Below, in pieces: positions 19,550 through 51,738 of a stretch of 64,000 nt of DNA; positions within the stretch are counted from its first letter, which is position 1; the number at the start of each line of letters is the position of its first letter. The DNA is from Macrostomum lignano. Its lineage: Eukaryota. The notes under the pieces are model-generated. The model made no database searches and was not told the origin of the DNA. It saw only the letters and a program-made list of their open reading frames with translations. The stretch is taken from positions 186,001 to 250,000 of the forward strand of contig NIVC01000860.1 of NCBI GenBank assembly GCA_002269645.1, in the 5' to 3' direction. The position numbers were made by a program, and so were the translations under genes.

Positions 19550-19968
19550 CCCCTCTGTAGCTGGCAACCTCTGTGCATAGCTGGCGCCCCCTCTGTAGCT
19601 GGCGCCCCCTCTGTAGCTGGTGCCCCCTTTGTAGCTGGCGCCCCCTCTGTAGCTGGCGCCCCCTCTGTAGCTGGCGCCCCCTCTGTAGCTGGCGCCCCCT
19701 CTGTAGCTGGCGCCCCCTCTGTAGCTGGCGCCCCCTCTGTAGCTGGCGCCCCCTCTGTAGCTGGTGCCCCCTTTGTAGCTGGCGCCCCCTCTGTAGCTGG
19801 CGCCCCCTCTGTAGCTGGCGCCCCCTCTGTAGCTGGCGCCCCCTCTGTAGCTGGCGCCCCCTCTGTAGCTGGCGCCCCCTCTGTAGCTGGCGCCCCCTCT
19901 GTAGCTGGTGCCCCCTCTGTAGCTGGCGCCCCCTCTGTAGCTGGCGCCCCCTCTGTAGCTGGCGCTCT
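19550..19968. repeat. 18-bp GC-rich minisatellite (gtagctggcgccccctct), ~22 copies
   Basis: Read directly; ORFs 19434, 19498 and 19573 are its translations. Confidence 0.95.
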
Positions 19969-20036
19969 CTCTGGCGACATTCAGTTAACATGTAGTTGCA
20001 TGCAATTCTCGTGCTCGTCTCAAACTCTTCCAACAG

Positions 20037-21761
20037 CCTGCTCTTCGCCAGTCACCTGGCCTTGTTCGCTGCGGCACAGACGTGTCAAAATAACGGCACC
20101 TTCGATTGGGTTCACTACACCTGTCACTGTCCGGTGCAAGCGTACGGTGATCAGTGCGAGCACCTGTTCGCCAGCGCGAGCCCATGCCGCAACGCCAGTG
20201 CAGCCGGTGTGACGACAATCCAAGACTCGACGAGCGCCCACGCCGCCCGCCAGCTGGAGTCCTGCAGCGCTTCGTCCGGCGGCAGGTCGTGCATCAATTT
20301 TGGGTCGCTATCGACCGGCTGGCACCGGTTCGAGTCCAGCAGCGGTAACTACCTGGTGTCGGACGGAGAATTTCCATGTACACTTGGCAAGCGGATCGGT
20401 TGCGGCTGCGGCAGAAACGATACGTGCGAGGCCTTCACTCTGCGACACCTGGTGCTCGAGGGCCAGCCTGAGAATGGAACCAACCTGTACTCGGCAAGGG
20501 CGTATTCGTACATGGAGGACAAGACGCAGTGCTACGATAGCAGCGTTCTGTTTTACAATGTCAGAGTTCTGAAATGTCCCAACAATGAGGAACTGTACTA
20601 CATGGGCCCTACAATGAGCTCAACTCATCGTTATTGCATCGGCGTCTACAGTTCTACAACTGCTCGAGTTCCGACCCCTGATGCGAAAGAGACCTCATCA
20701 CCGACTCCTGATCATGGAGGAGTCTCATCACCGACTCCTGATCATGGAGGAGTCTCATCACCGACTCCTGATCATGGAGGAGTCTCATCACCGACTCCTG
20801 ATCATGGAGGAGTCTCATCACCGACTCCTGATCATGGAGGAGTCTCATCACCGACTCCCAATCATGGAGGAGTCTCATCACCGACTCCTGATCATGGAGG
20901 AGTCTCATCACCGACTCCCAATCATGGAGGAGTCTCATCACCGACTCCTGATCATGGAGGAGTCTCATCACCGACTCCCAATCATGGAGGAGTCTCATCA
21001 CCGACTCCCAATCATGGAGGAGTCTCGTCACCGACTCCCAATCATGGAGGAGTCTCATCACCGACTTCTGATCATGGAGGAGTCTCATCACCGACTCCTG
21101 ATCATGGAGGAGTCTCATCAACCACGTCTAATCAGGATGCCACCTCGTCACCGGCAGAGAGGGACACGAAGTCATCAACTCAAAGTAAATATATGCGGCA
21201 GTAGTGTCTAAGCATCCAACAAAAAATTATAAAAATATTTCACTGATATACATGGTATATATTTTTGCTATAAACATTTGATGCACTTTCACGATTTCAG
21301 CAAGCCCCACAAGCACTCCAAGGAGTTCAGCTGGCGAACCAGACGTAAACTACTTGGTAGATAGTAAGCAGCCAAACCTTCGTGTGAACATTTCGGGTTG
21401 GGAAAAACCCGGAGAGCTAGTTTGTCGGGTGCGATCGGATTCTCTACAGGTGAACTATCTGCCAAGACCCTTGCCGATGACGGTGGCAAGCGACTCTTTG
21501 AGCGCTCAGTGCGACTTGAGTTCAGTGCTTGAGTGGCTCAGGACGACAAACAAGATTTATTTTAATAGCCAGGTAAGTGGGTTTTTTGTTTTAATTCAGA
21601 GCTTCAAGTTAACAAACATAAGCTTGGATATTGAATAAAAATTCAAAACGCCTTAATAACTAGAATAGTTTTAATCAATTATTAACTAACATACCGAAAC
21701 AATTAAATTTGTATAGTTATGCAATATTACAATGCGCTCGCATAGTTAGGATGACAGAATA

Positions 21762-22095: not shown

Positions 22096-22394
22096 CCTTC
22101 TTTGACACTAACTATTTATTCGGAAGATTACTTAATGAGCGCTGTTTTGCGTGAAATTAAAGATAAAAATGTGTTAGACAGTAAATATTCTTTTCAGATT
22201 CATCCTTTTAGAAAACTCCTCAACATTTGATTGTGAATATTGCATTACTGCCATGCGCTTGGGAGTACACAACGCATTCACCCTGGCGTCATCAACGATG
22301 TTAATAAAAATTGAAACAAATCATAATTGGATTGAATCCAAAAAGACACCAGTTTAAGTCCCTTCTACTGTAACAGCTACCAATCTGACCGATA

Positions 22395-22468
22395 GACACT
22401 GACAGACAGACAAACAAGCTGACAGACAGACAGACTGACAGGCAGACAGACTGACAGACAGACAGACT

Positions 22469-22503
<35 letters not shown>

Positions 22504-22592
22504 TGACAGGCAGACAGACTGACAGACAGACAGACTGACAGGCAGACAGACTGACAGACAGACAGACTGACAGACAGACAGACAGACAGACT

Positions 22593-22624
<32 letters not shown>

Positions 22625-22708
22625 CACTGACAGACAGACACACTGACAGACAGACAGACTGACAGACAGACAGACTGACAGACTGACAGACAGACAGACT
22701 GACAGACT

Positions 22709-22750
<42 letters not shown>

Positions 22751-22788
22751 AAGACAGACAGACAGACAGACAGACAGACTGACAGACT

Positions 22789-22822
<34 letters not shown>

Positions 22823-22900
22823 AAGACAGACAGACAGACAGACAGACTGACAGACAGACAGACACACAGACAGACAGACTGACAGACAGACAGACACTAA
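22395..22900. repeat. Compound (GACA/GACT)n microsatellite
   Basis: Read directly; the (SVCL)n ORFs are artefacts. Confidence 0.95.
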
Positions 22901-23964: not shown

Positions 23965-26188
23965 ATGCGTTGCTCCGATATCTTGTTGCCAGGCAATGGC
24001 AAGCGTCTCTGCCTGCTTGCTTTGCACTACAGCTGCTTGGTCGCCGGGGCCGCCTGCTCCATAGCGGCTGCCACTGGACGCCAGGCCTGGCAGCGGCTGA
24101 GCTGCTCAGCCGGCGGCGGCAGCCTGACAGCCTCCGGCGGCCCGCGGGGCCTCGACTTTGCTCTGGTTGGCCCGGCATTGTCAGGGACAAGCGGCTTCAA
24201 TGCCAGCAGCGCTTTTGGATTGGCCTTTGGACCCGTGCTGGCCCAACTGACTGCAGGTGAATGAATGCGTGCTAATTGCGTCATGGTGTCTTCTGGGTAG
24301 GCCACTGCTGGCAAACTGTGAGCACTTTTGTGATATTGTGCAGCTGTGTCTAACATGTGACCACCTGCAGTGTCTAACATGTGACCACCTGCAGTGTCTA
24401 ACATGTGACCACCTGCAGTGTCTAACATGTGACCACCTGCAGTGTCTAACATGTGACCACCTGCAGTGTCTAACATGTGAGCAGCCATGTCTAACATGTG
24501 AGCACCATTGTCTAACATGTGAGCACCTGCAGTGTCTAACATGTGAGCACCTGCAGTGTCTAACATGTGACCACCTGCAGTGTCTAACATGTGAGCACCC
24601 GTGTCTAACATGTAAGAACAAGTGTCCAACATGCGACCACCTGCAGTGTCTAACATGTGAGCAGCCATGTCTAACATGTTAAAAACCGTGTCTAACATGT
24701 AAGAAAAAGTGTCTAACATGCGACCACCTGCAGTGTCTAACATGTGAGCAGCCATGTCTAACATGTTAAAAACCGTGTCTAACATGTAAGAAAAAGTGTC
24801 TAACATGCGACCACCTGCAGTGTCTAACATGTGACCACCTGCAGTGTCTAACATATGACCACCTGCAGTGTCTAAAATGTGAGCAGCCATGTCTAACATG
24901 TTAAAAACCGTGTCTAACATGTAAGAACAAGTGTCTAACATGCGACCACCTGCAGTGTCTAACATGTGAGCAGCCATGTCTAACATGTTAAAAACCGTGT
25001 CTAACATGTAAGAACAAGTGTCTAACATGTTAGCACCAGTGTTTAACATGTGAGCACCTGCAGTGTCTAACATGTGAGCAGCTAGCCATGTCTAACATGT
25101 GAACACCATTGTCTAAATTGTGTGAGAAGCCGTCAATCAATCACATACATGTACCTAGACATCGACAAACCCATTTAAAATCCTAAATTTTTCAGCTATT
25201 GTGCAGTAAATGAACTTACTATCACATAAATACATACATGTACAAATAACTTGCTCAGACTCCCGAGCTTGGAGCAGCATTTCCTGGCTCCTAGCCGGTG
25301 CCAGCGTCTCAACCGTAGCCACTCTGATGGCCCTGATGCTCAAGAAATTCTGCGGCCGAGCAAGGGCGCTTGCTATGACCGGCGTGGTGGCCCTGCTAGT
25401 TGGAATCAGCAGTAAGTGCTGGGAGCAATTGCTAGTCAGTGTGAAGATCAGAAAGTTTCCTTTCGAAAAACCCGACCACTTCTCCACCCTCAGCCGGAAC
25501 TCTCACAGCCGCCATCATTGTCTACTCGGCTGCCGCGGCTCGCCTTCGAGCCGTGTTCGACACTGTGACCGCCGCTGCCACCGCTGCGCCCCACTCTGCA
25601 GGCGTCTCCGTCAGCTTCAACGACGCAACAGCGGCAGACGGATCCGCGACCGGCTTCGCTCTGACTGTGGCGGCTGACCTGGCCTGCTTTGCTGATCTTC
25701 TGCTTCTAGGAGTTAAGCGACTGGCTTTCGCCAGAAACAGGGAGGCCACATCTTACAACGTGGAGGCGGCGGCAACGGCAGCAGCAGCAGCGACATCGGC
25801 CGGGACAGCGGAGGCGACCAACGCCGCGGTGACACCAAGGCGAGCCGCGCCATCACCGCCGCCGTCACCTCCGCCGAGGGCGCATCGGCTTAAGTCGCTT
25901 GCAACCGACGATAGTGATGTACAGTCGACATCTACTGGCACCGGAGCGGCCAACTCCGAGCAGATGCGCTCCCGGCTGGAGCGTCGGCAAGAGGCTGAGA
26001 GACGAGCGGCAAGTGCGGCAGTTTCTGGCAACAGCACAGCTCGGGGGATTCAGCGGAGCTCGCAAGGTGCGGACAACCTGGCTATGGCGCCGACAACGCC
26101 AACTGGGAGCTCCTCAGTTGTTGACGGCGCCGACGGTGGGACAACAGCGGACGATGATGAGCCAATTGTGCAGGTGGACGTCCTCTGA
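23965..26188 (+). CDS. Four-transmembrane claudin/PMP22-like membrane protein with long Ala/Ser-rich tail, ~379 aa; exons 23965-24256, 25259-25411, 25494-26188
   Basis: All junctions are GT-AG, phase 1, and sum to 1140 nt. Four hydrophobic segments: LCLLALHYSCLVAGAACSIAAA; ISWLLAGASVSTVATLMALML; ALAMTGVVALLVGISTGTLTAAIIVY; GFALTVAADLACFADLLLLGV. Confidence 0.7.
24340..25110. repeat. 21/24-bp minisatellite (cacctgcagtgtctaacatgtgac) filling intron 1 of the 4-TM gene
   Basis: Read directly; ORFs 24027, 24181 and 24257 are largely translations of it. Confidence 0.93.
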
Positions 26189-31589: not shown

Positions 31590-31644
31590 GCCTTGCTGAG
31601 CTTTAACAGTGTGGCAGAGGGAGATCGCTTTGCATGTCAACTTT

Positions 31645-33620
31645 GATCCTATGATTTTCATTTATCCCATGGTTCTAATTCATCCCATGATTCTAATTTA
31701 TCCCATGATTTTCATTTATCCCATGGTTCTAATTTATCCCATGGTTCTAATTTATCCCATGGTTCTAATTTATCCCATGGTTCTAATTTATCCCATGGTT
31801 CTAATTTATCCCATGGTTCTAATTTATCCCATGGTTCTAATTTATCCCATGATTCTAATTTATCCCATGGTTCTAATTTATCCCATGATTCTAATTTATC
31901 CCATGATTCTAATTTATCCCATGGTTCTAATTTATCCCATGGTTCTAATTTATCCCATGGTTCTAATTTATCCCATGGTTCTAATTTATCCCATGGTTCT
32001 AATTTATCCCATGATTCTAATTTATCCCATGGTTCTAATTTATCCCATGGTTCTAATTTATCCCATGGTTCTAATTTATCCCATGATTCTAATTTATCCC
32101 ATGATTTTCATTTATCCCATGATTCTAATTTATCCCATGATTTTCATTTATCCCATGATTTTCATTTATCCCCTGGTTTTAATTTATCTCATGATTTTCA
32201 TTTATCCCATGGTTCTAATTTATCCCAAGATTTTCATTTATCCCATGGTTCTAATTTATCCCATGATTTTCATTTATCCCATGGTTCTAATTTATCCCAT
32301 GATTCTAATTTATCCCATGATTTTCATTTATCCCACGATTCTAATTTATCCCATGATTTTCATTTATCCCACGATTCTAATTTATCCCATGATTTTCATT
32401 TATCCCATGATTTTCATTTATCCCACGATTCTAATTTATCCCATGATTTTCATTTATCCCATGATTCTAATTCAGCCCATGATTTTCATTTATCCCACGA
32501 TTCTAATTTATCCCATGATTCTAATTTATCCCATGATTCTAATTCAGCCCATGATTCTAATTTATCCCATGGTTCTAATTTATCCCATGATTTTCATTTA
32601 TCCCATGATTCTAATTTATCCCATGATTCTAATTTATCCCATGGTTCTAATTCAGCCCATGATTCTAATTTATCCCATGGTTCTAATTTATCCCATGATT
32701 TTCATTTATCCCATGATTCTAATACAACCCATGATTCTAATTTATCCCATGATTCTAATTTATCGCAGGATTCTAATTTATCCCATGATTTTCATTTATC
32801 CCATGGTTCTAATTTATCCCATGGTTCTAATTTATCCCATGATTCTAATTTATCCCATGATTTTCATTTATCCCATGATTCTAATTTATCCCATGATTTT
32901 CATTTATCCCACGATTCTAATTTATCCCATGATTTTCATTTATCCCACGATTCTAATTTATCCCATGATTTTCATTTAGCTATCCCACGATTCTAATTTA
33001 TCCCATGATTTTCATTTATCCCACGATTCTAATTCATCCCCTGGTTCTAATTTATCCCATGGTTCTAATTTATCCCATGATTCTAATTTATCCCATGGTT
33101 CTAATTTATCCCATGATTTTCATTTATCCCATGATTCTAATTTATCCCATAATTCTAATTTATCCCATGGTTCTAATTTATCCCATGATTCTAATTTATC
33201 CCATGATTTTCATTTATCCCATGGTTCGAATTTATCCCATGATTCTAATTTATCCCATTCGATTCTAATTTATCCCATGATTCTAATTTATCCCATGATT
33301 CTAATTTATCGCAGGATTCTAATTTATCCCATGATTTTCATTTATCCCATGATTTTCATTTATCCCATGGTTCGAATTTATCCCATGATTCTAATTTATC
33401 CCATGGTTCTAATTTATCCCATGATTCTAATTTATCCCATGATTCTAATTTATCCCATGATTCTAATTTATCCCATGATTTTCATTTATCCCATGGTTCG
33501 AATTTATCCCATGATTCTAATTTATCCCATGATTCTAATTTATCCCATGATTCTAATTTATCCCATGATTCTAATTTATCCCCTGGTTCTAATCTATCCT
33601 ATAGTTCTAAATTATCCCAA
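31645..33620. repeat. 18-bp minisatellite (tttatcccatgattctaa), ~110 copies
   Basis: Read directly; it generates the 456-aa (IYPMIL)n ORF. Confidence 0.97.
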
Positions 33621-34139
33621 GCTGCTACACTTCAATACTTTAATAGATTATATAAAATAAAAAACTGTTATTCATACAAAATGTATCGAATACAAACAAA
33701 ATTAGTTGATAAATACCAACAGACTTTTATCAAGTATTGAGCTGATTAAGTTGTTTTAATAAACGACGTTATCAAACAGAAATATAAAGTCGAATAAAAA
33801 TAGGTGAATATTCAAGGCAATTAAAAGCACAATGGAAATAGTCAAGTAAACTATAATTGCAGGTGCAGAAGCATTAAATTTTTAGGGCTAATTCCATGTT
33901 ACATGGAAAAGTGAATAAGTATTACTAATAAACTTAATTAATATAAATAAGACTTTTGGCAACTGAAAACTAAATACAAAAATTTCAACCGAAATTGCAC
34001 TTTGGTAAAAAAAGTTGGCAAAAATGAGTTGCTTAAAGAAGTGAAACAAATGCTAGAATGAACTTACGGCTCAGTGTTTGTATTTCCAAAGTTATAAAAT
34101 GCCAATCATAATAAATTAAACTTGCACTTCCAGCTTAGT

Positions 34140-35250
34140 GGAACTCCTGAAGGGCCTGAAGAATCGGAGGAAATGGAAAACAGAGCTACTCCTGAAGGGC
34201 CTGAAGTATCAGAGGAAATGGAAAACAGAGCTACACCTGAAGGGCCTGAAGAATCGGCGGAAATGGAAAACAGAGCTACACCTGAAGGGCCTGAAGAATC
34301 GGAGGAAATGGAAAACAGAGCTACTCCTGAAGGGCCTGAAGAATCGGCGGAAATGGAAAACAGAGCTACTCCTGAAGGGCCTGAAGAATTGGAGGAAATG
34401 GAAAACAGAGCTACACCTGAAGGGCCTGAAGAATTGGAGGAAATGGAAAACAGAGCTACACATGAAGGGCCTGAAGAATCGGAGGAAATGGAAAACAGAG
34501 CTACTCCTGAAGGGCCTGAAGTATCAGAGGAAATGGAAAACAGAGCTACACCTGAAGGGCCTGAAGAATCGGCGGAAATGGAAAACAGAGCTACACCTGA
34601 AGGGCCTGAAGAATCGGAGGAAATGGAAAACAGAGCTACTCCTGAAGGGCCTGAAGTATCAGAGGAAATGGAAAACAGAGCTACACATGAAGGGCCTGAA
34701 GAATCGGAGGAAATGGAAAACAGAGCTACACATGAAGGGCCTGAAGAATCGGAGGAAATGGAAAACAGAGCTACACATGAAGGGCCTGAAGTATCAGAGG
34801 AAATGGAAAACAGAGCTACTCCTGAAGGGCCTGAAGAATCGGAGGAAATGGAAAACAGAGCTACACATGAAGGGCCTGAAGTATCAGAGGAAATGGAAAA
34901 CAGAGCTACTCCTGAAGGGCCTGAAGAATCGGAGGAAATGGAAAACAGAGCTACTCCTGAAGGGCCTGAAGAATCGGAGGATATAGAAAACAGAGCTACA
35001 CCTGAAGGGCCTGAAGTATCGGAGGAAATAGAAAACAGAGCTACTCCTGAAGGGTCTAAAGAGTCGGAGGAAATGGAAAACAGAGCTACTCCTGAAGGGC
35101 CTGAAGAATCGGAGGAACTGGAAAGCAGAACTACTCCTGAAGGGTCTGAAGAATCGAAGGAAATGGAAAACAGAGCTACTCCTGAAGGGCCTGAAGTATC
35201 GGAGGAAATAGAAAACAGAGCTACACCTGAAGGGCCTGAAGAATCAGAGG
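34140..35250 (+). repeat. 45-bp tandem repeat, ~25 copies, open as acidic (ATPEGPEESEEMENR)n; coding status uncertain
   Basis: Read directly. ORF 34122..35300 is open throughout and ends at TAA overlapping AATAAA. Confidence 0.9.
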
Positions 35251-35362
35251 AATCGTGGAGTGAATGCGCACACGACCTGAATAATCATAGCATGCAATAA
35301 AAAAGACCGTTTTCGTACTGAAAAATCCAGCTATACTACTAGTAAGTTCTGTAATTAAAACA

Positions 35363-38300
35363 TCAGGCATTTTTATTGGACTTTTTCTGCATCATCTTCA
35401 GCATCTGTGGAGGATAATTTATCTCGGATTTTAATCGCTGCTTTGCAGCTTCAGCAGCGGTGGCAGAGCTGGCGGTGGAGGCGGTGGCAGTCGCGACAGA
35501 GACAGTTGATGTCGAAGCGGCGGAAGCTGTAGAAGCCGCGGCGGTGGCCAGTTGTGTATCGCCCAATGCCGTACAAGTTGCGTCCAGAGTAGCCGAGAAT
35601 TCGGCCTCATCGTGTCGCTGCCGGATCAGCTGCAGTTCGAGTTCGGCCACGCGCTGCTCCGAAGCCTCCAGCTGAGCGCGCAGCTGGGCAGTCTGCCTGC
35701 TGTACTCCAGCTTGGTGTTGCGCAGGCTGCAGCACTCCAGCTCGCGAGAGCGCAGAGCTTCCTGGCATTCGGCTAGGCGAGCTTCCAGCGTTACGCCGCG
35801 ACCCTGCGCAGCCGCCGAGGCCTGCAGAAGCGACGATGCGGAAGATGCGGCGGGTGCGGCCGCGGAATTGAAGCCGCAGGTGCGCTCGAAGGTGCGAAGT
35901 ACGCTGGCGCTCTGCAGCTTATTGGCGTTCTGGGATACTTCCAGCAGTTGCACCTGTTCATGGGGGGTAGGGATATCTTTATTGCCCTCGGACTTGGGAC
36001 TAGCACTATGGATGTAAGACAGCAATTTAAGAAACATGTTTTGGTAATTAGAGGATAATTCCTTGTGATTTAGGATTAGGGATAATCCTACTGTATAAAA
36101 GTTGGAAGGTCACTTTTTTACTATGTGACCGTTTGTGACTTTCATTTGACCCTTAGAGCAATTTATGAGGCTTAACTTGCAACATTCACCAAATGCTGAG
36201 CTGTTGATTATTTTTATTCCAGTATCACTTTCAGACCATAATTTTTTATTCTGGTGTGAAGTTGCACTATTTCACTATTAGTAAAGAAAAATGTAAAAAA
36301 AAACATTTCTAATGTCAAAGTTCGGCTTGACAAACTTTATGAACCCTATCTATGGAAATTTGTGATTTGTTATATGCTATAACGTCGACATCTTGAACTG
36401 CTGTACATTCTTGTACGTATCTTCAGTATTTAGGCGCGCAACTATGCAGCTTTACCTAGTTGTATTTGAGCATCTGCAAGGCAGCAGAAAGCCACGAAAA
36501 GCCGCTCTGCAATTTTGTGGCCTCTGGACCCGTCGACGTATTTCGCATATCCTCTGGCTTGTCAACCACCTCAAAATGGATTTTGCACAGACGGCATTAT
36601 TTAACAACAATAATTTTTATTGCAATCTGACAGACACTATAATGCTTAGCAATATGAAGCCTGCCAAACGCGACAACCACTTGGGTGTCATGCCTATTTC
36701 ACTGCTTTCTTGCAGGGCTTCGACACTTACAAGGAACTCCACCCTGTTAGCTGCAACAGATGTTAGTCGGTTGAATTTGTATTGAATTGAATGTGTAGTG
36801 ACTGGCTGCTAACTGGCCATTCAGCAGCATTCACTAGTTTTCCTTAAGAGCTCTGTGTTCCGCTGCACAGCAGCTCAGTCCACCTGACCTAGAGAGAGAC
36901 ACCCTGTGCTGGGCCTAAGTGTTTACTGCCCGATGACTCATCGCCTGAGCGGGCGCGGGCAGCCACACTCAATGTCTTCCCACTCGCGCTGAGGAGGCGT
37001 TGCAGGATGACTCATCACCTGCGCGGAGTATAATGGCTGCCTAGAGGGAGTAAACAGGATGACTCATCCGCCCATGTTCTATTTTTAGCACAGAAAAAGC
37101 ACGTGACTATGCACGCTAGTTGTGCGTGGCAGCTGACCTTGAGTCACACTACGGCGGCGTGACAGGGTTGCCTTATTTGGAAGTTGGCCTTGAGTCACAC
37201 ATCTCTTGCATGACTCGGACGGCCAAATAAGGAAGTTTCACGCGCTCACTGCATGAAACTTACGTGACTTTTGGGGGTCCGCTCGGCTATAAATACAGAG
37301 CATCTGGACTACAGAGCATTCACTAGCTTCCCTTAAGAGTGCTGTGATCCGCTGCACAGTATCTCAGTCCACCTGAGCTAGTGAGAGAGTTACCCTGTGC
37401 TGGGCCTAAGTGTTTACTGCCCGATGACTCATCGCCTGAGCGGGCGCGGGCAGCCACACTCAATGTCTTCCCACTCGCGCTGAGGAGGCGTTGCAGGATG
37501 ACTCATCACCTGCGCGGAGTATAATGGCTGCCTAGAGGGAGTAAACAGGATGACTCATCCGCCCATGTTCTATTTTTAGCACAGAATAAGCACGTGACTG
37601 TGCACGCACGCTGTGCGTGGCCACTGACCTTGAGTCACGCCACTGCTGCGTGACAGGGTTGCCTTATTTGGAAGTTGGCCTTGAATCACGCGTCGTTCGC
37701 ATGATTTCAATGCCCAAATAAGGAAGTTTCACGCGCTCACCGCATGAAACTCACGTGACTTTTGGGGGTCCGCTCGGCTATAAATACGGAGTATCTGAGA
37801 GCCGTTTTTCTCCAGATCGTGAGCCGCGTTCGGGAGCTTCCTAGATTGGAGCTGCCACTGCCTCCGAGCTCTCCTCTCTCATTTCAGGTTTTACAGGTTT
37901 TCAGGTTCGAGCAGCTTTTACTAAGATGATTGACTGTTGAGACATTTTTCAGATTTGCCTTTGCTCCGAGCGACTTTGTTAATTTTCTTTCAGGTGACGG
38001 ATAGACAACTCTGTCGACGCGTCGAGTCCGCACACCAAGGTGGCAGCAACCCTACCAAGTAACGGCAACGTTTTAGGTTCATTTTCAGGCAAATCGATAG
38101 GTAGTACTGCGGTGCTATCTAGCTTCTTCAGGAGCAGCGGGTTCTATTTTCTAGGAACATCTTCGAGAACCCGAGAAGGAGAAGTACTTCACTCGTATAT
38201 CGCAAATGTAGTTTCATTCGTAGCTGCCGTATCATCGTCAAGTACAATATCTGTATTTTTTCTGTTTTTTTACTATGTTAGTAGTATATAGTGTACAATA

Positions 38301-41300
38301 CATTTCTATACTGCTTGATTAGTTATTATTGATTTATAGCTTATTTCATATGCTGTATCAATGGCTTTCATGATGAGAGCAATTTTCAGCTGTTTATTTC
38401 ACGTTTTTAGGCGAGTATACAAGCATATGCACTGTGCCCAACATAGTTTGAATTGGCAATTAAACACTATAAAATGTAAACTTTGTAAAGATTAGTAATT
38501 GAAAACTACATTTTAATGACCATATTGACAAGTTAAAAAAATTAGATATGATTGGTTGCCATCTTGTTTGTAATTCACTAAGCAATCAAGCATATATAGC
38601 AAGGCCCCACAGCAACCAGTCAGTCCTTATCCGTTTTAGCTTATTCACAGTTCAAAAACCATTTCAGTTTACTGCGCTATGTCTAACGCAGCAACAACTG
38701 TCAGAAAGCTAGCGAGCGCAAAAAGCGACAGAGGCAGAAGTTCTGCAGCAGGAGCCGACGAGCAGTAAGAGTAGCATGTCGTCGGAGTCCTCCGTTAACA
38801 AGTCCACCACTTGGTGAGTGGTAGAGTACCGAGCAATGGATAGCGGTAGGATGTGCATAATCAATTTCTGCTGTGTTATCCTGGAAGCTGCTAAACGGAA
38901 CACCTTGATCGTTAATGATAGCGTAGCAATGATACCCAGCAAGACGTGAAAGATATATTGCGTCTGATTTTTTAAGGGGCTGTTCAAGGCCAAGACGGCC
39001 GCGGACAACGCTGCACGTGCGTGTCTTGCAGTACCAGCTGGGTAATTAGCGTCGTTGGGTACCGCGATGTCTTCATCGGCGATTTGTCAGGAATAGGACG
39101 GGAGAATTACAGTCTGTCAAAAGAGAGCCTGCTGAATCAGCTGGAAAACAGCCAAGCGAATAAAGAAGGTTGCAGAGCAAGTAGGACACGACTGAAGAAA
39201 AAATAAACGAGCTGAAGACGGTAGCTCAGCTACAGTCAGCTGAGGAGTCATCGTCGCAAAATGTCTTTCTTTACGCTCGCAGAAGCTCTAACTGCCGCTA
39301 TAACGAGCATTGCTGTCGGTTCAATTGAAAGAGGTCTGAAAGAGGTTTAGTAATCAATCTCACAAATATGCCACCAGCAACTGTTAACAGCATTTCGGCT
39401 GCTGCTGACCTGCAGTCCCGCTCGTCATCTGTCTAAGCATCGGCACCCACTGTCGCATTGTGCCAACGCTTTCCAAGTGTTTTACTTGGCATCGCCAACT
39501 ACCAGACCGTTTCTGCTACAAAGAAGGGGGCCATTCAGACCTTCGTCAAAGGTCGGGGTTGCCCGGACCAAAACAATGTTAAGATCCGATATTTGTTGAA
39601 GACCTTCCGGCACGGAGCCCATAGGCGAAACCCGAGCAGCGGACGCTAGTACGAACAAGATGGGTTCGCCACGCGCGCAGAGGACCGCCACAGAATTATC
39701 AAGAGAATAAAAGATCAAAATCAAAACCTCCTATCGGACACAGTCCAAAGACCATCATCATCTACGACCTTAACAGCCATCGACACAACAAGCGCGTGAA
39801 ATGGAGCCCAATAAAAAAGAAAGCATTAATTGGCAAGGCATGCACGATGCAGAAACAACGTTGAAAGTACGAGTAGAAATGGAGAAACGCCTTGAAATGA
39901 TATAAGGGGCAACAATCAGCTCAAACATCCCATCGTCGAGGCAAGACCTGCAGTCGATCATAACCGAAAGTGCAAGAAAGATTTGCGGCACACGGAGAAA
40001 ACAAGATGGGAAAGCCAACAATAAAATTGCAATGAGCCAACCGAGAACACGAAGCCCTCTCAGGAACGCGCCGATCGCGACAGAGATCGACGACGACCAC
40101 AGACGGCGACATACCCATGCGAGTACCCAGACTGTGGCAAGATCTGCCGGAAAACTTTTAGAAAGGAGGCTACGATGATCGGAGCGAGACAGAGGTGAAC
40201 AACCAACAATGTGCAGTAGTTCAAATGCGACGCTCTGGTGTAGAGGTCAAATCTGGCGCGGCACAGGAGAGCTTGTCAAAGGACGGCGGCAGGGGAAGTC
40301 AGGGCATGTAGGCAGTGGCTAGGAAGTATCGAGCAGCAACAGCAACGTGCTAGGACTGCGGACGGGTGCCGTCCAAGACAAACATGGCCTGGCCAGACAT
40401 CGGAGGACATGTCGAGGCGAGTGATGACTACAGGTGTCCAATGCCCTATAGCACATAGAAGATGACTGAAGAAAAGCGGGATGCCAGAGAAGAGAATCTC
40501 TGATTGAGTAAACTAAGTTTCTGGTATGAAAATACAATATGGAAAAAATTGGACTTGATCATGGAAATTAAGTACGAGTGCAACTTCACTATAACAGGCT
40601 GTTTGTTTGTTTTTTGACACTGTTTTTTTTCTAAAATCAACCCAACACACAAGGGTCACAATCACAGTCTTTTCATCTGATGACGGTCACATTGACGATC
40701 GACCGTTTTTTGACAGAAACTTTAATCTCATCAATCCAATCTTTATTTGGATTAGGGATAATCTTATCTGAAATTGGGATTAGCGATTATCCTACCTGAT
40801 TAGCGATAATCCTATCTGGATTTGGGATTAGCGATAATCCTACCTGTATTTGGATAAGGGATAATCTTATCTGAAATTGGGATTAGCGATAATCCTATCT
40901 GGATTTGGGATTAGCGATAATTCTACTTGTATTTGGGATTAGCGATAATCCTACCTGTATTTGGAATTAGCGATAATCCTATCTGAATTTGGGATTAGCG
41001 ATAATCCTATCTGGATTTTGGATTGGGGATAAGTACCCCTATAAAAAATAGGGATAAATATCCCTAAGATGCGGAAGAATGCGGATAAGTACATAACTTT
41101 TGGGATTTTAGAGTTATAATACATTTTAAAATTGACCTTTCGCTGCAGCGCCTCGATCTGCTGCCGGCTCCATGCCGCCTCCTGCTCCAAGTCGGCCACG
41201 TACTGAGCATTGTAGGCTGGCCGGGCGCGCTCTCGCATCCTGGCGGCGAACAGGCAACGCATCTCGGCAGCCTCGGCGTCCTTCTTCGCCAGCCGATCGC

Positions 41301-43801
41301 GAAGCTGAGCGACGCCTTGCTGCAGTTCAACGACGCGGAGCTCCGCTTTCACCCGACGATCTTCCAGTTCGGCGAACAGCGAGTTGCCGCGCTCCGCCAG
41401 CTGGCGAGCGTCGCCAGCTTCAGCGTCCGTTGACAAGGCGTCGCCGTCGTTAGCTTCCGAGTTGGGCGCGCCGCCTGGACGACCCGCGGCGGCCGCTCGG
41501 AGTCTCTGCTCGTCGACCGCCAAGACGAGGGCCTCGGCCTCGGCTTCTCGTTCGGCGAGGCGGTCGCGCAGCAGCGACGACTCTGCGCGGGCGGCGTCGG
41601 CGGCTTCTTCGGCATCGGCGAGGCGAACGGCCAGCTTGCGCAGCTCCGACTGGGGAAATTTAGAAGATATGATGATGGGATTTTGAGGATGATGATGGGA
41701 TTTTGAAGATATGATTGGAATTTTGAGGATGATGATGGGATTTTGAGGATGATGATGGGATTTCGAGGATGATGATAATTGGATTTTTAGAATGATGATG
41801 GAATTTTATGGATGATGATGGGATTTTGAGGGTGATGATGGGATTTCGAGGATGATGATGGGATTTCGAGGATGATGATAATGGGATTTTTAGAATGATG
41901 ATGGAATTTTATGGATGATGATGGGATTTTGAGGGTGATGATGGGATTTCGAGGATGATGATGGGATTTTGAGGATATGATGGGATTTCGAGGATGATGA
42001 TAATGGGGTTTTGATAATACGATGGGATTTTGATATGGGCGTGTCCTACGGTTTAGGCTACTGGTTTACTGGTTTCTTTTCAATTTGATTAATTTGAGCT
42101 CGGGAGACTCCGGGCTTAAAGCTGGAAGATTTTTTTTAGCTACCTTAAATTGTATGAGTAGTCGTTACTATCTAGGCTATGTTGCTCTACTAATCTGCTA
42201 TTACGTACTTTTATTTGGTAGGTCGCTGCCACAAGACTAATGCCCCTTATAAATTAATGTTAAATTAAAATAAGTGAGACAAGAGTCAGTTTCATATAAG
42301 ATTATTTAGATTAGATAAACAAAAGAAATATTATTAAACCAAATATGCAAAGACAGTACACAATTAATCCCTGTTTTAGCACTTCGGTAGACTCCGATTA
42401 CTTATTTAGACCAATGGTAGACTCCTTTAGTCTTTTCTTATGTTACCTGATTTATAATCCTATTCTCGGTAGACTCCGTTTTTGACTAAGTGGTAGACTC
42501 CTTCTTAGCCTCCCTATTTTACCCCTTAGAATTTTATCCTTAACTTACCCTTGATTTCTTTAAGCTTCTGTAATAAATTTTGAAAGGGAGTCTCCCTTAT
42601 TTTCTATTCTAGAATTGAGATCTTTGTCTCTATAAATAATGTCCTGATGGACGGTCCTGAACGGATGCTTTTCCCGAGGCTAAACAGCCTTTTACTAATA
42701 GAGGAACCCGCTAATACTCGAATTCCCACAACTTCGACTACTTTCCCGAGGGTGAACTACTATCAGTAGTGTAAAAGCAAAACTGCTTATTCTCGATTTT
42801 AAAAAGCTGAAGTAAAATGACTTGGCGAATCAGAACCCTTGGCAAACGCCTTTAGCAAAACTGCTTGAACTAAACCCCCCTACTACAATTTTAATAATAT
42901 GATGAGATTTTGAGGATAATGGTGATAAGATGTGAGGATTTATGATGTGATTTTGGGGATTGATGAGATTCTAAGGCAGGGGTCTGCAAATCCGGCCTGC
43001 TCAAGGTTTATCACTTTTCAGCTCTCTTCTCCATTCTCTCATCTCTGCCCTCTTTTTTCTTTTCTCCCTCTCCTCTCTAGCTACAAGATTATTATCGTAC
43101 ATACGCGACGCTTTAAAAAGTGATTTAATTTAGATTTGTTTTCTGTCCTAATACTAAATCTAAATAATCAGAGTATTAGTTTGGCAGCATTCGCTTTTAC
43201 CCACCTTATAAGTCAGCTCCTGCTCATAGCGGTCTCGCAGTGCTTCCTCCTCTGCGTCGCGGGCAGCGGCCAGCGCCTCCTTGACCTCGGCCAGCTGCGA
43301 GCGGAGCAACGACACCGTCGAGTCGGTTGCGGCCGTCGCCGAGGTTGGATTAGCCGCAGTCACCTGAGTTGTAGCAGATGCCGATGTGCTGGATGACGCG
43401 GCGACTGTCTCCTTGCCAGTCACGCTGGCTGACTCAGCCGGTGTTTGCGGCGAGCTGCCAGCGGAAGCGGCGGCGGCAGCAGCGGCGGCAGCGTTGGCCT
43501 GTTTCAGCTCCGCAGCCAGCGCTTTCCGAGCTCGCTCGAGTTCGTCTAACTCGGAGGCGTAGTGCGACTCCATTTGGCGGGCAATTTTAAGGCCGCCATT
43601 TAGTTCGTGATTCTCCTGCTCAAGTGAGCAGCAGCGACCGTTCAGGTCGGCCAGCTGCCTCTGCAGGCGGCTGCAGACCGCCCGCTTGTGCTGTAGATTC
43701 TCCTCCAGCTCCTGGCGGCTCAAGCAGTCCGGGCTGCCTTTGTTTGGCGTGTCCGCCTCCAGTGGGGAAGGCAGCATCTCAGTGCTGGTTGCTGCAATCA
43801 T
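35363..43801 (-). CDS. SPDL1: Spindly-like coiled-coil dynein/dynactin adaptor, ~560 aa; exons ~43801/43777-43205, 41649-41137, 35953-35363
   Basis: Contains the Spindly motif GNSLFAELEDRR. SLEQENHELN...MESH resembles Spindly CC1. All junctions are phase 0 GT-AG, and the length is similar to animal Spindly. BICDR-type adaptors share the motif, so orthology is not certain. Confidence 0.7.
36826..37800 (+). promoter_or_regulatory. Two tandem 491-bp direct repeats, each with clustered AP-1 sites, two CArG boxes, an E-box and a TATA box
   Basis: TGACTCA/TGAGTCA at 36934, ~37008, ~37060, ~37140, ~37190 (offset +491 in copy 2, last site mutated). CCTTATTTGG and CCAAATAAGG, CACGTG, and TATAAATA at 37288 and 37779. 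Confidence 0.7.
39770..40170 (+). mobile_element. Highly degraded fragment resembling an RLE-type (HERO/NeSL-like) non-LTR retrotransposon ORF
   Basis: Frameshifted KRVKW/PNKKESINWQ...EKRLEMI and a partial Cys motif YPCEYPDCGKIC; no RT motifs seen. Confidence 0.3.
40740..41030. repeat. ~30-bp intronic minisatellite (gggattagcgataatcctatctggattt)
   Basis: Read directly; a related unit occurs at 36068-36095. Confidence 0.88.
41665..42030. repeat. ~21-bp intronic minisatellite (gatgatgatgggattttgag)
   Basis: Read directly; it resumes in degenerate form at 42895-42970. Confidence 0.88.
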
Positions 43802-44739
43802 TATTGGACATGCAAGCTGTACAAGATATCCAGACTTGAATGGCAAACTAAAAATATGCAATCTGACACCTTCGCTCTGTGGCCACTTGAGACTGGCAGA
43901 GATATATACTACCATTGCTGTTTGCTTTCTAGCTGCTGTATAGCATCAAATGATATACATGTATCTTATGTAGCTACAGATATGGCTACGGGAAGTTACA
44001 GTATATAGAGGTTTTTCAGCAAAGCATACAGATATGGATATCGTTACAGGTACTCTCATACTTCACATATTTAGTTCCCATCTAGCAATACCACTCAACT
44101 GAGAATTGAAAGACCACTGGAGCTATCACTTTGATAGGGTTAAGGTCATACATGCGCAACTTCTGAAATTACGCTGGCCGTGCGACTTAGTTTTCGATAA
44201 AAAATGCGACTTACCTATGAAAGAGCCAAGCAAAAACTTTAGGTAAACGGCAGGAGTAACTATGACCATATTTTTAAAGCTAAATGCCTCGCCAGCTTTA
44301 GTGCTGCGTGCAGATTCCGCGTTTTTATAACAGCTAATCAGTATGTCATCTAGTGGCGGCATGAAGCAATTGGTAAATTGTCAGTACAGTGTAGTGAGCA
44401 TACTACAAAAGTCATGATTCATAAATGTCCAGAAGTAAGTGAAGTGAATACAGTGTGACCTATAGCTCAAGAACGATTTGCTAGACGATTTGGCATGGAA
44501 GATGAGAGCCCTGATTCAGATGGCTCATCAGATGCAGAATACGAATCCAGTAGAGATACAAGCTGTGAAAACCCACAGATTTTTAAACCACTGAATTCTA
44601 ATTCCCGGAACTATTTTTGCATAGATTCTAAATTTGAAGTCATGCTCAAACAAAAACTTGTTAACAGTTAGGAAAAAGGCAAAGATGGGAGTAATGCATG
44701 TTAAACTAAGATTTGAGGCCTTTGCAAATTCTCTCCATT

Positions 44740-50600: not shown

Positions 50601-51738
50601 ACAGCTTTTGAATACGCTAATATAAACGTCATGATGAACTCTTACAAAGCGCACTAACTTAACTTTTTAGTTTTCTAAGAAGCCACATCCTGGTAATTCA
50701 TATCACGTTACACACTAATGTTTTGTAGTGTGAAGCGTTAGACAGAAATTGACATAAGGATATTACTGGATATATCCTATCCTGTAGACTATTCATCTAA
50801 AAGTGTCCTTATGTGTCCTTGTTTTGTCCAGGCGCAACATTACCGGGCGTAGATATAAGTGTAAATACCAGTTTAAAAATCACATAAAAAGAAAGGCTGT
50901 TTTTCAACAATATAATTGATAAGGCCTATTGGCTATTATTCTATTGTTTTAGACTTTTAGTTTATAAGTTGTCTGAGTTGATAATTTAATTTATTGTTCG
51001 GTGAAATATATTTAAATTATATTTTTGGCGAAGTAGTTAATTTTTTCTAGGCTCTTGATGATCTTGATCTTAACAATAGTTTGATAGGAGCATGCCATTT
51101 TATTAGGTTGCAAGATAGTTGCTTGTGTTGTATATTGTTCGTAATAAATCTGCTTGAAAAGTCGTTTTTTTGTTTCCATAGGTCCCTTTACAAAGAGCCT
51201 ACTGCATTGTTTAACTGTTTCTGCTTTATATTACTTCTAGTTCTAGTCATGTTTTCCTTTAAAAGCTTAGCTAAAATAATTTTTCATAGTTTTTCACAGG
51301 TATAATATTAGTTATCAATGGGCTATATATATTATAATGTTTTTTATCACTGCAAAATTAGTTCAATTATACTTTCGTTTGTGGTTAATTCACTTGTTCT
51401 ATATTTTGTGTTATGTTTTCTAACTTTTAATGTTGCCAAATTATTATATCTAGTTGTTGCTAGTTATTTTATTGAAAAACACTGTTTTGTAGTTTATTTA
51501 TTTTTTATCAATGTACAATTTAACAGCTTATTCAATATAAATTCATTTTCCTATTTCAAGAATAGAATAGTTTTAGGTATTTTTAATCCATTGGGTACTG
51601 TTCACATGACAACCTAAATTTCGTAACTCTTGTGAATTCTACCTACTTTTAATTCATTCCAATTTTACTCATAGTAAGAACTGTACTATAAATCTAGCTT
51701 TACTCCAATTTTAGGCATCTGTGCTATATCTACCGCGC

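What the first reader, a model, noticed from the sequence alone, without database searches (positions are those of the whole stretch)
36826..37960. Duplicated 491-bp immediate-early-style promoter (AP-1 + SRF/CArG + E-box + TATA) firing antisense inside the Spindly intron
Seen: the first unit has five canonical AP-1 heptamers (three as palindromic ATGACTCAT), two perfect CC(A/T)6GG boxes, CACGTG and TATAAATA in promoter order. The second unit repeats this with one AP-1 site mutated. The copies have diverged in spacers, but almost all sites are kept. The second TATA is followed by a cluster of TTTCAG/TTACAG acceptor-like sites (37885-37995). Established: AP-1 plus SRF is the typical logic of wound/serum immediate-early genes. 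Inference: this is a mobile, possibly injury-inducible promoter cassette with tandem monomers (like LTR U3 or L1 monomers) that could drive a TE or passenger transcript antisense to a mitotic gene.
Basis: partly seen in the sequence, partly recalled or inferred. Interest (0 to 1): 0.72.

Follow-up and report, generated by a model that had tools for sequence, protein, structure and literature searches.

The report
Duplicated stress-type promoter beside dead zinc-finger gene
A 490-base promoter-like module packed with AP-1, SRF and MEF2 binding sites is present twice in tandem inside an intron; it probably belonged to a now-decayed KLF-like zinc-finger gene, and nothing shows that it is mobile.

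Summary
Two head-to-tail units (36826-37314 and 37315-~37801) are about 92% identical and include a 195-nt perfect run.

Only AP-1 and CArG stand out among 45 consensus motifs: none of 2000 shuffles reached the observed counts. Where the units have diverged, changes avoid the motifs (1 seen, 9.7 expected).

The "mobile cassette / LTR U3 / L1 monomer" reading is not supported:
- there is no other copy in the 64 kb window;
- there are no LTR termini, inverted ends or target duplications beyond chance;
- no reverse transcriptase was found;
- no match turned up in public collections.

The module lies in a 4.6-kb block that interrupts a 28-bp satellite. On the same strand, 2.3 kb downstream, is a decayed SP/KLF-type three-finger domain ending in stop codons (frameshift-tolerant score 90; shuffles about 48 ± 8).

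My best reading is the MAPK/stress-responsive promoter of a nested KLF-like gene that has since died. Its binding sites look better kept than the coding part. Expression is untested. It is a new member of a known kind, of moderate interest.

The parts
36826..37314 (+). Promoter unit 1 (489 nt): three ATGACTCAT, MEF2 site, CACGTG, two TGAGTCA, two CArG-GGAAGT composites, TATAAATA
37315..37801 (+). Promoter unit 2, about 92% identical to unit 1; fifth AP-1 site mutated to TGAATCA (37682); extra TCACGTGA at 37751
36901..37095 (+). 195-nt stretch identical to 37392-37586, inside flanks that differ by about 15%; probably a gene-conversion tract. Holds the three ATGACTCAT sites and the MEF2 site
36933..37067 (+). 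Three palindromic AP-1/TRE sites ATGACTCAT (36933, 37007, 37059), spaced 74 and 52 nt, with extended core GATGACTCATC; unit 2 copies at 37424, 37498, 37550
37079..37088 (+). Perfect MEF2 consensus CTATTTTTAG (unit 2 copy at 37570-37579)
   Evidence: (1 seen, 0.004 expected)
37134..37236 (+). Two 51-nt sub-repeats, each with TGAGTCA plus CC(A/T)6GGAAGT (an SRF box fused to an Ets-type GGAA core). The A/T core is inverted between the two (TTATTT against AAATAA), yet the CArG rule is kept. Unit 2 copy at 37625-37727
   Evidence: (D3)
37288..37295 (+). TATAAATA of unit 1; initiator-like CATTC follows, with its A at 37318, 30 nt after the first T
37779..37786 (+). TATAAATA of unit 2; the predicted start near 37800-37812 has no clear initiator
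37802..38130 (+). Non-coding leader. Candidate short intron GTGAGC (37819) to CTCTCATTTCAG (37887). Cluster of six TT[TA]CAG at 37882-38088. The first ATG (37926) opens a 4-codon frame
40100..40427 (+). Decayed SP/KLF-type three-zinc-finger domain. Finger 1 is YPCEYPDCGK (C-x4-C). Linker is GEQPTMC (40194-40214). Octapeptides LARHRRAC (40253) and LARHRRTC (40389) differ mostly at synonymous positions. Two stop codons come 3 codons after the last ligand. Four frameshifts, in-frame stops and lost His ligands
36097..40732 (.). 4.64-kb block of inserted DNA holding the cassette, the leader and the zinc-finger relic; without it the intron would be about 0.5 kb, mostly satellite
36036..36096 (+). 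Left remnant (about 2.3 units) of the 28-bp satellite AATCCTATCTGAATTTGGGATTAGCGAT
40733..41032 (+). Right part (about 11 units) of the same satellite, same orientation; found nowhere else in the window

Best explanation
Layer A, about 0.75 on its own. This is a real Pol II enhancer-promoter module whose binding sites have been kept by selection. Jun/Fos-type bZIP dimers would bind the five TGASTCA sites. An SRF dimer, possibly with an Elk-type Ets partner, would bind the two CC(A/T)6GGAAGT composites. MEF2 would bind CTATTTTTAG, and a bHLH-ZIP factor would bind CACGTG. TBP would bind TATAAATA, so that transcription starts about 30 nt downstream on the + strand: at CATTC (37318) for unit 1, reading through unit 2, and near 37800-37812 for unit 2. 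This combination is the target set of the ERK/JNK/p38 pathways, so output should rise on growth-factor, stress or wound signals. That last step is inferred, not shown.

Layer B, about 0.4. The module arrived as part of a gene-sized 4.6-kb block inserted into a satellite in a short intron. It was the promoter of the KLF-like zinc-finger gene whose decayed C-terminal three-finger domain lies 2.3 kb downstream on the same strand. That gene is dead: frameshifts, stops, and no ATG frame longer than 54 codons. The promoter's sites are much better kept. Today it can give at most a non-coding transcript, antisense to the 5' exons of the host dynein-adaptor gene, or act as an intronic enhancer.

The 490-bp duplication is an ordinary local tandem duplication, later partly homogenised by gene conversion.
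For: - Motif excess. In a 45-motif panel, only AP-1 and CArG were never reached in 2000 shuffles. MEF2 has p = 0.0035.
- Changes between units avoid motifs in the diverged zone: 1 seen against 9.65 expected, P = 7e-5.
- The two CArG boxes differ at 4 of 6 core positions yet both obey CC(A/T)6GG.
- TATA is at the 3' end of each unit, and the A of CATTC is exactly 30 nt after the first TATA.
- The block is bounded on both sides by the same 28-bp satellite in the same orientation. That satellite occurs nowhere else in the window.
- Zinc-finger relic. The best tblastn hit of the KLF4 fingers in the whole window is 40100-40171 (E = 0.009). A PDB sequence search of the joined remnant returns only ZIC3 and KLF4 chains.
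- Frameshift-tolerant alignment scores: KLF4 90, SP1 89, generic ZNF 72, EGR1 61. Nulls: query-shuffled 49.7 ± 7.4 (maximum 80 of 500), target-shuffled 47.3 ± 8.2 (maximum 85 of 800), reverse strand 49.
- LARHRRAC and LARHRRTC differ at 8 of 24 bases, six of them synonymous.
- Stop codons follow 3 codons after the last ligand. This matches the C-terminal position of KLF fingers described in PMC5985828.
- No other gene candidate lies between the promoter and the relic.
- The window is rich in tandem repeats of all sizes.
Against: - There are no expression, chromatin or comparative data of any kind.
- The zinc-finger similarity is weak (E about 0.01, empirical p about 0.002). It needs four frameshifts. 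A His/Cys-rich minisatellite elsewhere in the window reaches the same raw score.
- Nothing recognisable as coding fills the 2.3 kb between the leader and the fingers.
- The link between promoter and relic rests only on shared strand, proximity and lying in the same inserted block.
- The promoter looks far fresher than the coding relic, so the two could differ in age and origin.
- Motif definitions in the conservation test were chosen after seeing the sequence.
- Site multiplicity is partly inherited through internal sub-repeats.
- The source genome could not be searched, so a multi-copy (mobile) family is not excluded.
Confidence: 0.45

Rival explanations
1. One reading: the cassette is the promoter of a transposable element (LTR U3 duplication, or LINE-type 5' monomers). 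The downstream DNA would then be the decayed body of that element.
For: - It sits in clearly inserted DNA that splits a satellite.
- The units are head to tail, each with its own TATA.
- The left edge of the array (36826) lies within about 3 nt of where the initiator would be if a transcript from an upstream unit had been copied.
- The + strand at 39000-40000 is A-rich, like the sense strand of LINEs.
- There is a possible 13-14-nt duplicated satellite phase at the block ends: AATCCTACTGTAT and AATCCAATCTTTAT.
- Human LTR10A/F shows that AP-1 sites multiplied by internal tandem repeats, with SRF and USF1 binding, do occur on retroelement LTRs (10.1126/sciadv.ado1218).
Against: - No second copy or fragment exists in 64 kb of a repeat-rich genome.
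- TG..CA ends with 5-6-nt duplications occur at the chance rate: 5 found, about 3 expected.
- Inverted-end and flank alignments fall within the range of shuffles.
- No RT, endonuclease, gag or integrase signal in any frame.
- A 79-aa stretch I suspected to be a LINE tail found only two spurious repeat proteins among 1.84 billion.
- There were no homologues in the word-indexed search.
- The recognisable coding relic is a host-type SP/KLF finger domain.
- The satellite-phase overlap is expected by chance about half the time.
Confidence: 0.2
2. It is an intronic enhancer with no productive transcript of its own. It would regulate the host dynein-adaptor (Spindly-like) gene or a neighbour in response to growth or stress signals. 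The TATA boxes would be incidental or give only enhancer RNA.
For: - Site-level conservation points to function that does not depend on a downstream coding gene.
- There is no intact ORF downstream.
- E-box plus AP-1 combinations are sufficient regeneration-response enhancers in zebrafish (PMC9922731).
Against: - A perfect TATAAATA sits at the same 3'-terminal position in both units. The 35 nt around it are fully conserved (ACGTGAC...TATAAATAC).
- An initiator-like sequence lies at +30.
- Both points argue for a core promoter with a fixed direction.
Confidence: 0.15
3. It is a non-functional relic. The promoter died with its gene, and the intact look of the sites reflects youth of the duplication, gene conversion and sub-repeat inheritance rather than selection.
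For: - A 195-nt perfect run shows that conversion or recent exchange is acting.
- Many sites share extended flanks and so descend from sub-repeats.
- The downstream gene is dead.
Against: - In the zone with about 15% divergence, motifs took 1 change against 9.65 expected.
- Nine of ten AP-1 heptamers are perfect, while the nearby finger domain has lost most of its ligands.
- The CArG rule survives four core changes.
Confidence: 0.12
4. It is an enhancer-promoter captured from a DNA virus, of the immediate-early type.
For: Viral immediate-early enhancers are also built from repeated AP-1, SRF and CRE-type sites (my own knowledge).
Against: - There are no viral genes in the block or the window.
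- There was no exact match in viral contigs.
- A gapped motif scan gave three unrelated hits. The one inspected is a 34-nt tandem repeat at the end of a giant-virus contig.
Confidence: 0.02

Closest known systems
Immediate-early gene promoters of the c-fos / egr-1 / junB type (SRE = CArG + Ets/TCF site, AP-1 or CRE sites, TATA)
   Same: It has CC(A/T)6GG boxes next to a GGAA Ets core, several TRE sites, a MEF2 site and a TATA box within about 500 nt, all oriented to one start site. This is the same ERK/JNK/p38 signalling logic.
   Different: - The Ets core overlaps the CArG box instead of lying a few bases away.
- It has five AP-1 sites and no CRE.
- The whole promoter is duplicated in tandem.
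- There is no intact coding gene downstream.
- Induction is untested.
Human LTR10A/F endogenous-retrovirus enhancers (10.1126/sciadv.ado1218)
   Same: AP-1 motifs are multiplied by internal tandem repeats. The elements are bound by FOSL1, JUND, SRF and USF1, and their activity follows MAPK signalling.
   Different: - LTR10 is a multi-copy LTR family with a 28-30-bp repeat.
- Here the repeats are 51-74 nt sub-repeats inside a 490-nt duplicated unit.
- This is a single locus, and no LTR hallmarks were found.
Mouse L1 5' monomer arrays
   Same: Head-to-tail promoter units lie upstream of a leader, so a transcript from the upstream unit carries the downstream promoter.
   Different: - No ORF1/ORF2 or RT was found.
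- There are only two units.
- The promoter is TATA-driven rather than internal.
- No other copies were seen.
Zebrafish regeneration-response enhancers built from E-box + AP-1 motifs (PMC9922731)
   Same: AP-1 sites co-occur with an E-box, and multimerised sites are sufficient for an injury response there.
   Different: Those are enhancers tested in vivo. Here CACGTG alone is not enriched (p about 0.15) and nothing has been tested.
SP/KLF zinc-finger genes (for the downstream relic)
   Same: Three fingers with C-x4-C in the first and C-x2-C in the third; a TGE.P-like linker; a basic stretch and 'TAT..C.Y..CGK' before and in finger 1, as in KLF4; and a stop right after finger 3.
   Different: - Pseudogene state: four frameshifts, in-frame stops, and most His ligands replaced.
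- The last ligand is Cys in two fingers.
- Finger 2 spacing is C-x8-C in the best frame.
- No N-terminal region is recognisable.

Membership tests
Immediate-early (SRE/TRE-type) Pol II promoter | One or more CArG boxes CC(A/T)6GG | tested here: met
   Two per unit (37171, 37223; 37662, 37714). Shuffles give 0.012-0.016 per unit.
Immediate-early (SRE/TRE-type) Pol II promoter | Ets/TCF site next to the CArG box | tested here: inconclusive
   GGAAGT follows all four CArG boxes (none of 5000 shuffles reached the observed 2 composite sites). However, its GG is the last GG of the box, so joint occupancy is uncertain.
Immediate-early (SRE/TRE-type) Pol II promoter | AP-1/TRE or CRE sites | tested here: met
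   Five TGASTCA in unit 1 and four in unit 2. There is no CRE.
Immediate-early (SRE/TRE-type) Pol II promoter | TATA box with a start site about 30 nt downstream | tested here: met
   TATAAATA at 37288 and 37779. The A of CATTC at 37318 is at +30 from the first TATA. No clear initiator follows the second. This is sequence evidence only.
Immediate-early (SRE/TRE-type) Pol II promoter | Rapid induction by a stimulus without new protein synthesis | not testable with these tools
   No transcript or chromatin data are available.
Immediate-early (SRE/TRE-type) Pol II promoter | Drives an intact gene | tested here: not met
   No ATG frame longer than 54 codons on the + strand in 37800-40900. Only a decayed finger domain is present.
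LTR retrotransposon LTR (U3-R-U5) | TG...CA termini flanked by a 4-6-nt target duplication | tested here: not met
   Five candidate pairs against about 3 expected by chance, none with inverted termini.
LTR retrotransposon LTR (U3-R-U5) | A second LTR or internal gag/pol nearby | tested here: not met
   No further copy in the window. No Pfam domain in any + frame downstream.
LINE with 5' monomer array | Head-to-tail promoter monomers at the 5' end | tested here: met
   Two units, about 490 nt period. Tandem duplication is common in this window anyway.
LINE with 5' monomer array | ORF2 with endonuclease and reverse transcriptase downstream | tested here: not met
   Pfam found nothing at E up to 10. 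phmmer against 1.84 billion proteins gave only two repeat-protein artefacts. tblastx against the rest of the window found nothing.
LINE with 5' monomer array | Many dispersed copies with target-site duplications | not testable with these tools
   The source genome is not in any searchable collection. Within the window this is the only copy.
SP/KLF zinc-finger family (downstream relic) | Three C2H2 fingers with C-x4-C, C-x4-C, C-x2-C spacing and TGEKP-type linkers | tested here: inconclusive
   Finger 1 is C-x4-C, the linker is GEQPTMC and finger 3 is C-x2-C. Finger 2 is C-x8-C in the best frame. Alignment score is 90 against nulls of about 48 ± 8.
SP/KLF zinc-finger family (downstream relic) | Fingers at the extreme C-terminus (KLF branch) | tested here: met
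   LARHRRTC-RGE is followed by two stop codons at 40422-40427. The defining feature is taken from PMC5985828.
SP/KLF zinc-finger family (downstream relic) | Open reading frame intact | tested here: not met
   Four frameshifts, in-frame stops, and His ligands replaced.
   LFAEL at 41365-41379, minus strand. There is a weak HAP1_N hit on the upstream exon. The motif is shared by many dynein adaptors (PMC9481740). No homologues were retrieved.

The most novel reading that the evidence does not exclude
The promoter outlived its own KLF-like gene because it was co-opted. On stress or wounding it would fire antisense through the 5' exons and promoter region of the mitotic dynein-adaptor (Spindly-like) host gene, or act on that gene as an enhancer. 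MAPK signalling would then be coupled to control of a kinetochore/checkpoint factor. The selective upkeep of nine perfect AP-1 sites, four CArG boxes and two MEF2 sites beside a thoroughly decayed coding region fits this reading, but it does not prove it.
Probability: 0.1. Interest if true: 0.6.

Novelty: new member of a known kind. Interest (0 to 1): 0.36.

Why it matters
If the module is active, it would be a compact natural AP-1/SRF/MEF2 stress-responsive promoter from a poorly sampled animal genome. It could be useful as a reporter or driver.

It would also be a clear case of a promoter kept after its gene has died, sitting antisense inside a mitotic gene.

If a genome-wide search instead shows many copies, it would be a stress-timed mobile promoter, which is the more interesting outcome.

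As it stands, it is one well-formed promoter of a familiar kind with no functional data.

Tried and rejected
- **LTR structure.** I enumerated TG..CA pairs with 5-6-nt flanking duplications around the cassette. Five hits against about 3 expected, none convincing.
- **Inverted ends and flank duplications.** I tested the 4.6-kb block, and separately the upstream flank of the cassette against the 3' region. The best was a 13-nt inverted match (36256 / 40577) scoring 26, with a shuffle maximum of 25-31, so not significant.
- **Homology upstream of unit 1 to the end of a unit** (a possible third, truncated unit). Not significant, p = 0.29-0.48.
- **LINE tail.** From memory I read an 'R.RW..H' stretch and the fingers as the C-terminus of a LINE ORF2. 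Pfam, the word-indexed search, phmmer against 1.84 billion representatives and tblastx within the window gave no support. I dropped it in favour of the SP/KLF reading.
- **Structured RNA genes.** No Rfam match at gathering thresholds anywhere in the window. No tRNA.
- **External copies.**
  - An exact 24-mer search in viral contigs gave 0 hits.
  - Two exact searches in metagenome contigs gave 0 hits each.
  - A gapped double-AP-1 pattern in viral contigs gave 3 unrelated hits.
- **Identifying the organism or relatives.**
  - Searching with the host-gene exon and with a 366-aa single-exon ORF gave no homologues.
  - The look-up of contigs encoding exactly the 366-aa ORF (16409-17509) found none on record.
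- **CpG observed/expected as a mark of an unmethylated promoter.** 0.72-0.85 in the cassette against 0.78 for the window, so uninformative.
- **Other KLF/SP hallmarks upstream of the fingers** (CtBP motif, Btd box, Sp box). None found.
- **Bacterial promoter/terminator scan.** Irrelevant here. It only pointed out a conserved palindrome, AAGTTTCA-N13-TGAAACTT, between the second CArG and the TATA.
Full report
**What is there**

The region holds a head-to-tail duplication with a period of 489-491 nt. The repeat finder gave a 300-nt pair at 96% and a 74-nt pair at 88%. blastn gave 483 aligned bases at 91.9%. No third copy or fragment exists anywhere in the 64 kb. I place unit 1 at 36826-37314 and unit 2 at 37315 to about 37801.

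- three ATGACTCAT (36933, 37007, 37059);
- two TGAGTCA (37140, 37191);
- CCTTATTTGG (37171) and CCAAATAAGG (37223);
- CACGTG (37100);
- TATAAATA (37288).

Unit 2 repeats all of them, except that the fifth AP-1 site is TGAATCA (37682). It also has a second E-box, TCACGTGA, at 37751.

Two things were missed. A perfect MEF2 consensus, CTATTTTTAG, lies at 37079 and 37570. All four CArG boxes run straight into GGAAGT, giving CC(A/T)6GGAAGT.

**Is it more than chance?**

Yes. In 5000 dinucleotide-preserving shuffles of unit 1, the mean number of AP-1 heptamers was 0.11 (maximum 2), against 5 observed. ATGASTCAT averaged 0.003 against 3, and CArG 0.012 against 2.

To avoid cherry-picking, I scored 45 common consensus motifs. 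Only AP-1 and CArG were never reached in 2000 shuffles. MEF2 came next (p = 0.0035). CACGTG alone is not enriched (p about 0.15). The other 63 kb of the window hold 8 AP-1 heptamers, no ATGASTCAT and 2 CArG boxes.

The acceptor-like cluster is also real. Six TT[TA]CAG lie in 37882-38088. This is the densest 250-nt interval in the window (background 0.55 per kb), although three of them belong to a tiny (GTTTTCAG)n repeat.

**Internal anatomy**

The sites are not independent. CAGGATGACTCATC occurs twice exactly and GATGACTCATC three times. A 51-nt sub-repeat carrying TGAGTCA + CArG + GGAAGT occurs twice per unit. Part of the multiplicity is therefore inherited.

The flanks of these sub-repeats have drifted apart while the cores stayed. 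The two CArG boxes differ at four of six core positions (TTATTT against AAATAA) and both still obey the CC(A/T)6GG rule.

**How the two units differ**

The units differ at 46 of 494 aligned columns, very unevenly. The stretch 36901-37095 is a 195-nt perfect run, while the flanks differ by about 15%. At that rate a perfect run of 195 is essentially impossible by chance. I read it as a gene-conversion or unequal-exchange tract, not as constraint on every base.

The 3' zone (37096-37317) is informative. It has 34 differing columns of 222, but only 1 in the 63 motif columns, where 9.65 are expected (hypergeometric P = 7e-5). The test is post hoc, and conserved blocks extend beyond the named motifs. 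For example, the 35 nt ACGTGAC...TATAAATAC are untouched. So 'spacers diverge, sites stay' is supported for this third of the unit only.

**Core promoter and direction**

Each TATAAATA sits at the 3' end of its unit on the + strand. After the first one, the A of an initiator-like CATTC (37318) lies exactly 30 nt from the first T of the box. A transcript from unit 1 would therefore read through the whole of unit 2. After the second box there is no clear initiator.

The duplication junction falls in the 25 nt between the TATA and this predicted start. That would happen by chance about once in twenty, so I treat it as a hint only. Sequence upstream of 36826 is not significantly similar to the end of a unit (p = 0.29-0.48).

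Downstream there is a possible short intron, from GTGAGC at 37819 to CATTTCAG at 37887. There is no ATG frame longer than 54 codons up to 40900.

**Surroundings**

The cassette lies in an intron of a minus-strand coiled-coil gene, with exon ORFs at 35363-36037, 40951-41523 and 43160-43915. Pfam gives only a weak HAP1_N hit. An L-F-A-E-L 'Spindly motif' is present at 41365-41379, but that motif is shared by many dynein adaptors (PMC9481740). 'Spindly' is therefore plausible but unproven.

A 28-bp satellite (AATCCTATCTGAATTTGGGATTAGCGAT) lies on both sides of a 4.64-kb block: 36036-36096 and 40733-41032. Both parts have the same orientation, and the satellite occurs nowhere else in the window. 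Without the block the intron would be about 0.5 kb of satellite. So 36097-40732, cassette included, is inserted DNA.

**Is it a transposable element?**

I found no positive sign of one:
- TG..CA ends with flanking duplications occur at the chance rate.
- Inverted ends and flank duplications are within shuffle range.
- No RT, endonuclease, gag or integrase signal exists in any + frame.
- tblastx against the rest of the window is empty.
- There is no Rfam match.
- Exact searches of viral and metagenome collections gave nothing.

I first read the purine-rich stretch 39000-40500 as a decayed LINE tail, from memory. Neither the word-indexed search nor phmmer against 1.84 billion proteins (two repetitive artefacts) supported that.

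The window is also full of tandem repeats with periods from 21 nt to 2.75 kb. A 490-nt tandem duplication therefore needs no special mechanism.

The source genome itself could not be searched. A dispersed family is not excluded, only unsupported.

**What lies downstream**

The + strand at 40100-40427 carries a decayed zinc-finger domain.
- Two octapeptides, LARHRRAC (40253) and LARHRRTC (40389), differ at 8 of 24 bases, six of them synonymous. That is the mark of former protein-level constraint.
- The best tblastn hit of the KLF4 finger domain in the whole window is QTATYPCEYPDCGKICRKTFRKEA against [24 protein letters not shown] (E = 0.009).
- A PDB sequence search with the frame-joined remnant returned only ZIC3 and KLF4 chains (E 0.02-0.8).
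- A frameshift-tolerant alignment I wrote scores 90 for KLF4 over all three fingers, 89 for SP1, 72 for a generic KRAB-type array and 61 for EGR1.
- Null scores are 49.7 ± 7.4 (maximum 80 of 500 shuffled queries) and 47.3 ± 8.2 (maximum 85 of 800 shuffled targets). The reverse strand scores 49.
- Among 348 other window segments, only a His/Cys-rich minisatellite scores as high.

Finger 1 has C-x4-C, a GEQPTMC linker follows, and finger 3 has C-x2-C. Two stop codons come three codons after the last ligand. This is the KLF arrangement of three C-terminal fingers (PMC5985828). Four frameshifts, in-frame stops and lost histidines show that it is a pseudogene. Other KLF/SP hallmarks were not found.

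**Best reading**

The block looks like a compact gene unit: 0.7 kb upstream DNA, the duplicated promoter, a leader, about 2.3 kb of unrecognisable body, a KLF-type finger domain, stops, and 0.3 kb of tail.

I therefore think the cassette most likely was the promoter of a nested KLF-like gene. Vertebrate KLF2/4/6/10 are themselves early-response genes driven by MEF2, SRF and AP-1 (my own knowledge), which makes the pairing coherent.

The proposed mechanism is as follows. ERK/JNK/p38 signalling would activate Jun/Fos, SRF-TCF and MEF2 on their sites. TBP would load at TATAAATA, and Pol II would start about 30 nt downstream on the + strand. All of this is inferred from sequence.

One tension remains and is interesting. 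The finger domain has decayed heavily, yet nine of ten AP-1 heptamers, four CArG boxes, two MEF2 sites and both TATA boxes are perfect. Either the promoter is younger than the relic or unrelated to it, or it has been kept for a use of its own: a non-coding antisense transcript or enhancer activity.

**Comparison with known systems**

It works like an immediate-early SRE/TRE promoter. It resembles the AP-1 repeat enhancers of human LTR10A/F, which also bind SRF and USF1 and follow MAPK signalling (10.1126/sciadv.ado1218). It also resembles the E-box + AP-1 regeneration enhancers of zebrafish (PMC9922731).

It fails the tested membership features of LTRs and of LINE monomer arrays. I rate it a new member of a known kind.

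**Verdict**

The promoter interpretation is supported by sequence statistics. Mobility and injury induction are unsupported or untested. The likely owner gene is a dead KLF-like factor.

Interest is moderate (0.36). A whole-genome copy count and 5'-end mapping would decide the open points.

Noticed in passing
window 2900-13200: A macro tandem repeat of about 2.75 kb is present about four times at 94-99% identity. It carries its own internal low-complexity ORFs (6027-6512, 8757-9242, 12819-13304).
   Followed up: partly
window 19434-21211, 22301-22897, 24027-25073, 31609-33660, 34122-35300, 53022-53989, 56184-57163: Many long minisatellite arrays open spurious ORFs in several frames, for example a 45-nt unit at 34122-35300. 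The genome is unusually rich in tandem repeats. The His/Cys-rich array at 24188-24910 mimics zinc fingers in alignment scores.
   Followed up: partly
window 36036-36096 and 40733-41032: A 28-bp satellite private to this intron is split by the 4.6-kb block. The block ends show overlapping satellite phase (AATCCTACTGTAT and AATCCAATCTTTAT). This could be a 13-14-nt target duplication or just neighbouring units.
   Followed up: partly
window 37233-37261 and 37724-37752: A conserved palindrome, AAGTTTCA-N13-TGAAACTT, lies between the second CArG box and the TATA in both units. No factor has been assigned.
   Followed up: no
window 59219-59893 (+): An ORF with Mos1/mariner-type HTH domains (HTH_48 and HTH_32). 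This is the N-terminal part of a mariner-like transposase.
   Followed up: partly
window 15369-15929 (+): An ORF with a weak zf-RVT match (E = 0.008, below the Pfam cut-off). It may be the tail of a reverse-transcriptase element and is unrelated to the cassette.
   Followed up: no
window 1760-1800: A tRNA-like fragment (GGCTCAGTGGTAGCGCGTCTGACTCATG) accounts for one of the few AP-1-like heptamers outside the cassette. ARAGORN calls no tRNA there.
   Followed up: partly
window 51721-52287 (+): An ORF with a weak Death-domain match (E = 0.008, below the cut-off). It is the next plausible + strand gene downstream of the cassette, about 14 kb away.
   Followed up: no
window 61087-63635 (-): Exon-like ORFs contain a 'DNGAGVD...NDGVYTG' stretch that, from memory, resembles CLCA-type proteins. 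Not tested.
   Followed up: no
L001 1-140 (IMGVR_UViG_GVMAG-M-3300018080-29_000001): A giant-virus metagenome contig ends in a 34-nt tandem repeat, each unit holding GATGAGTCATC. It shows no similarity to the cassette beyond that motif.
   Followed up: partly
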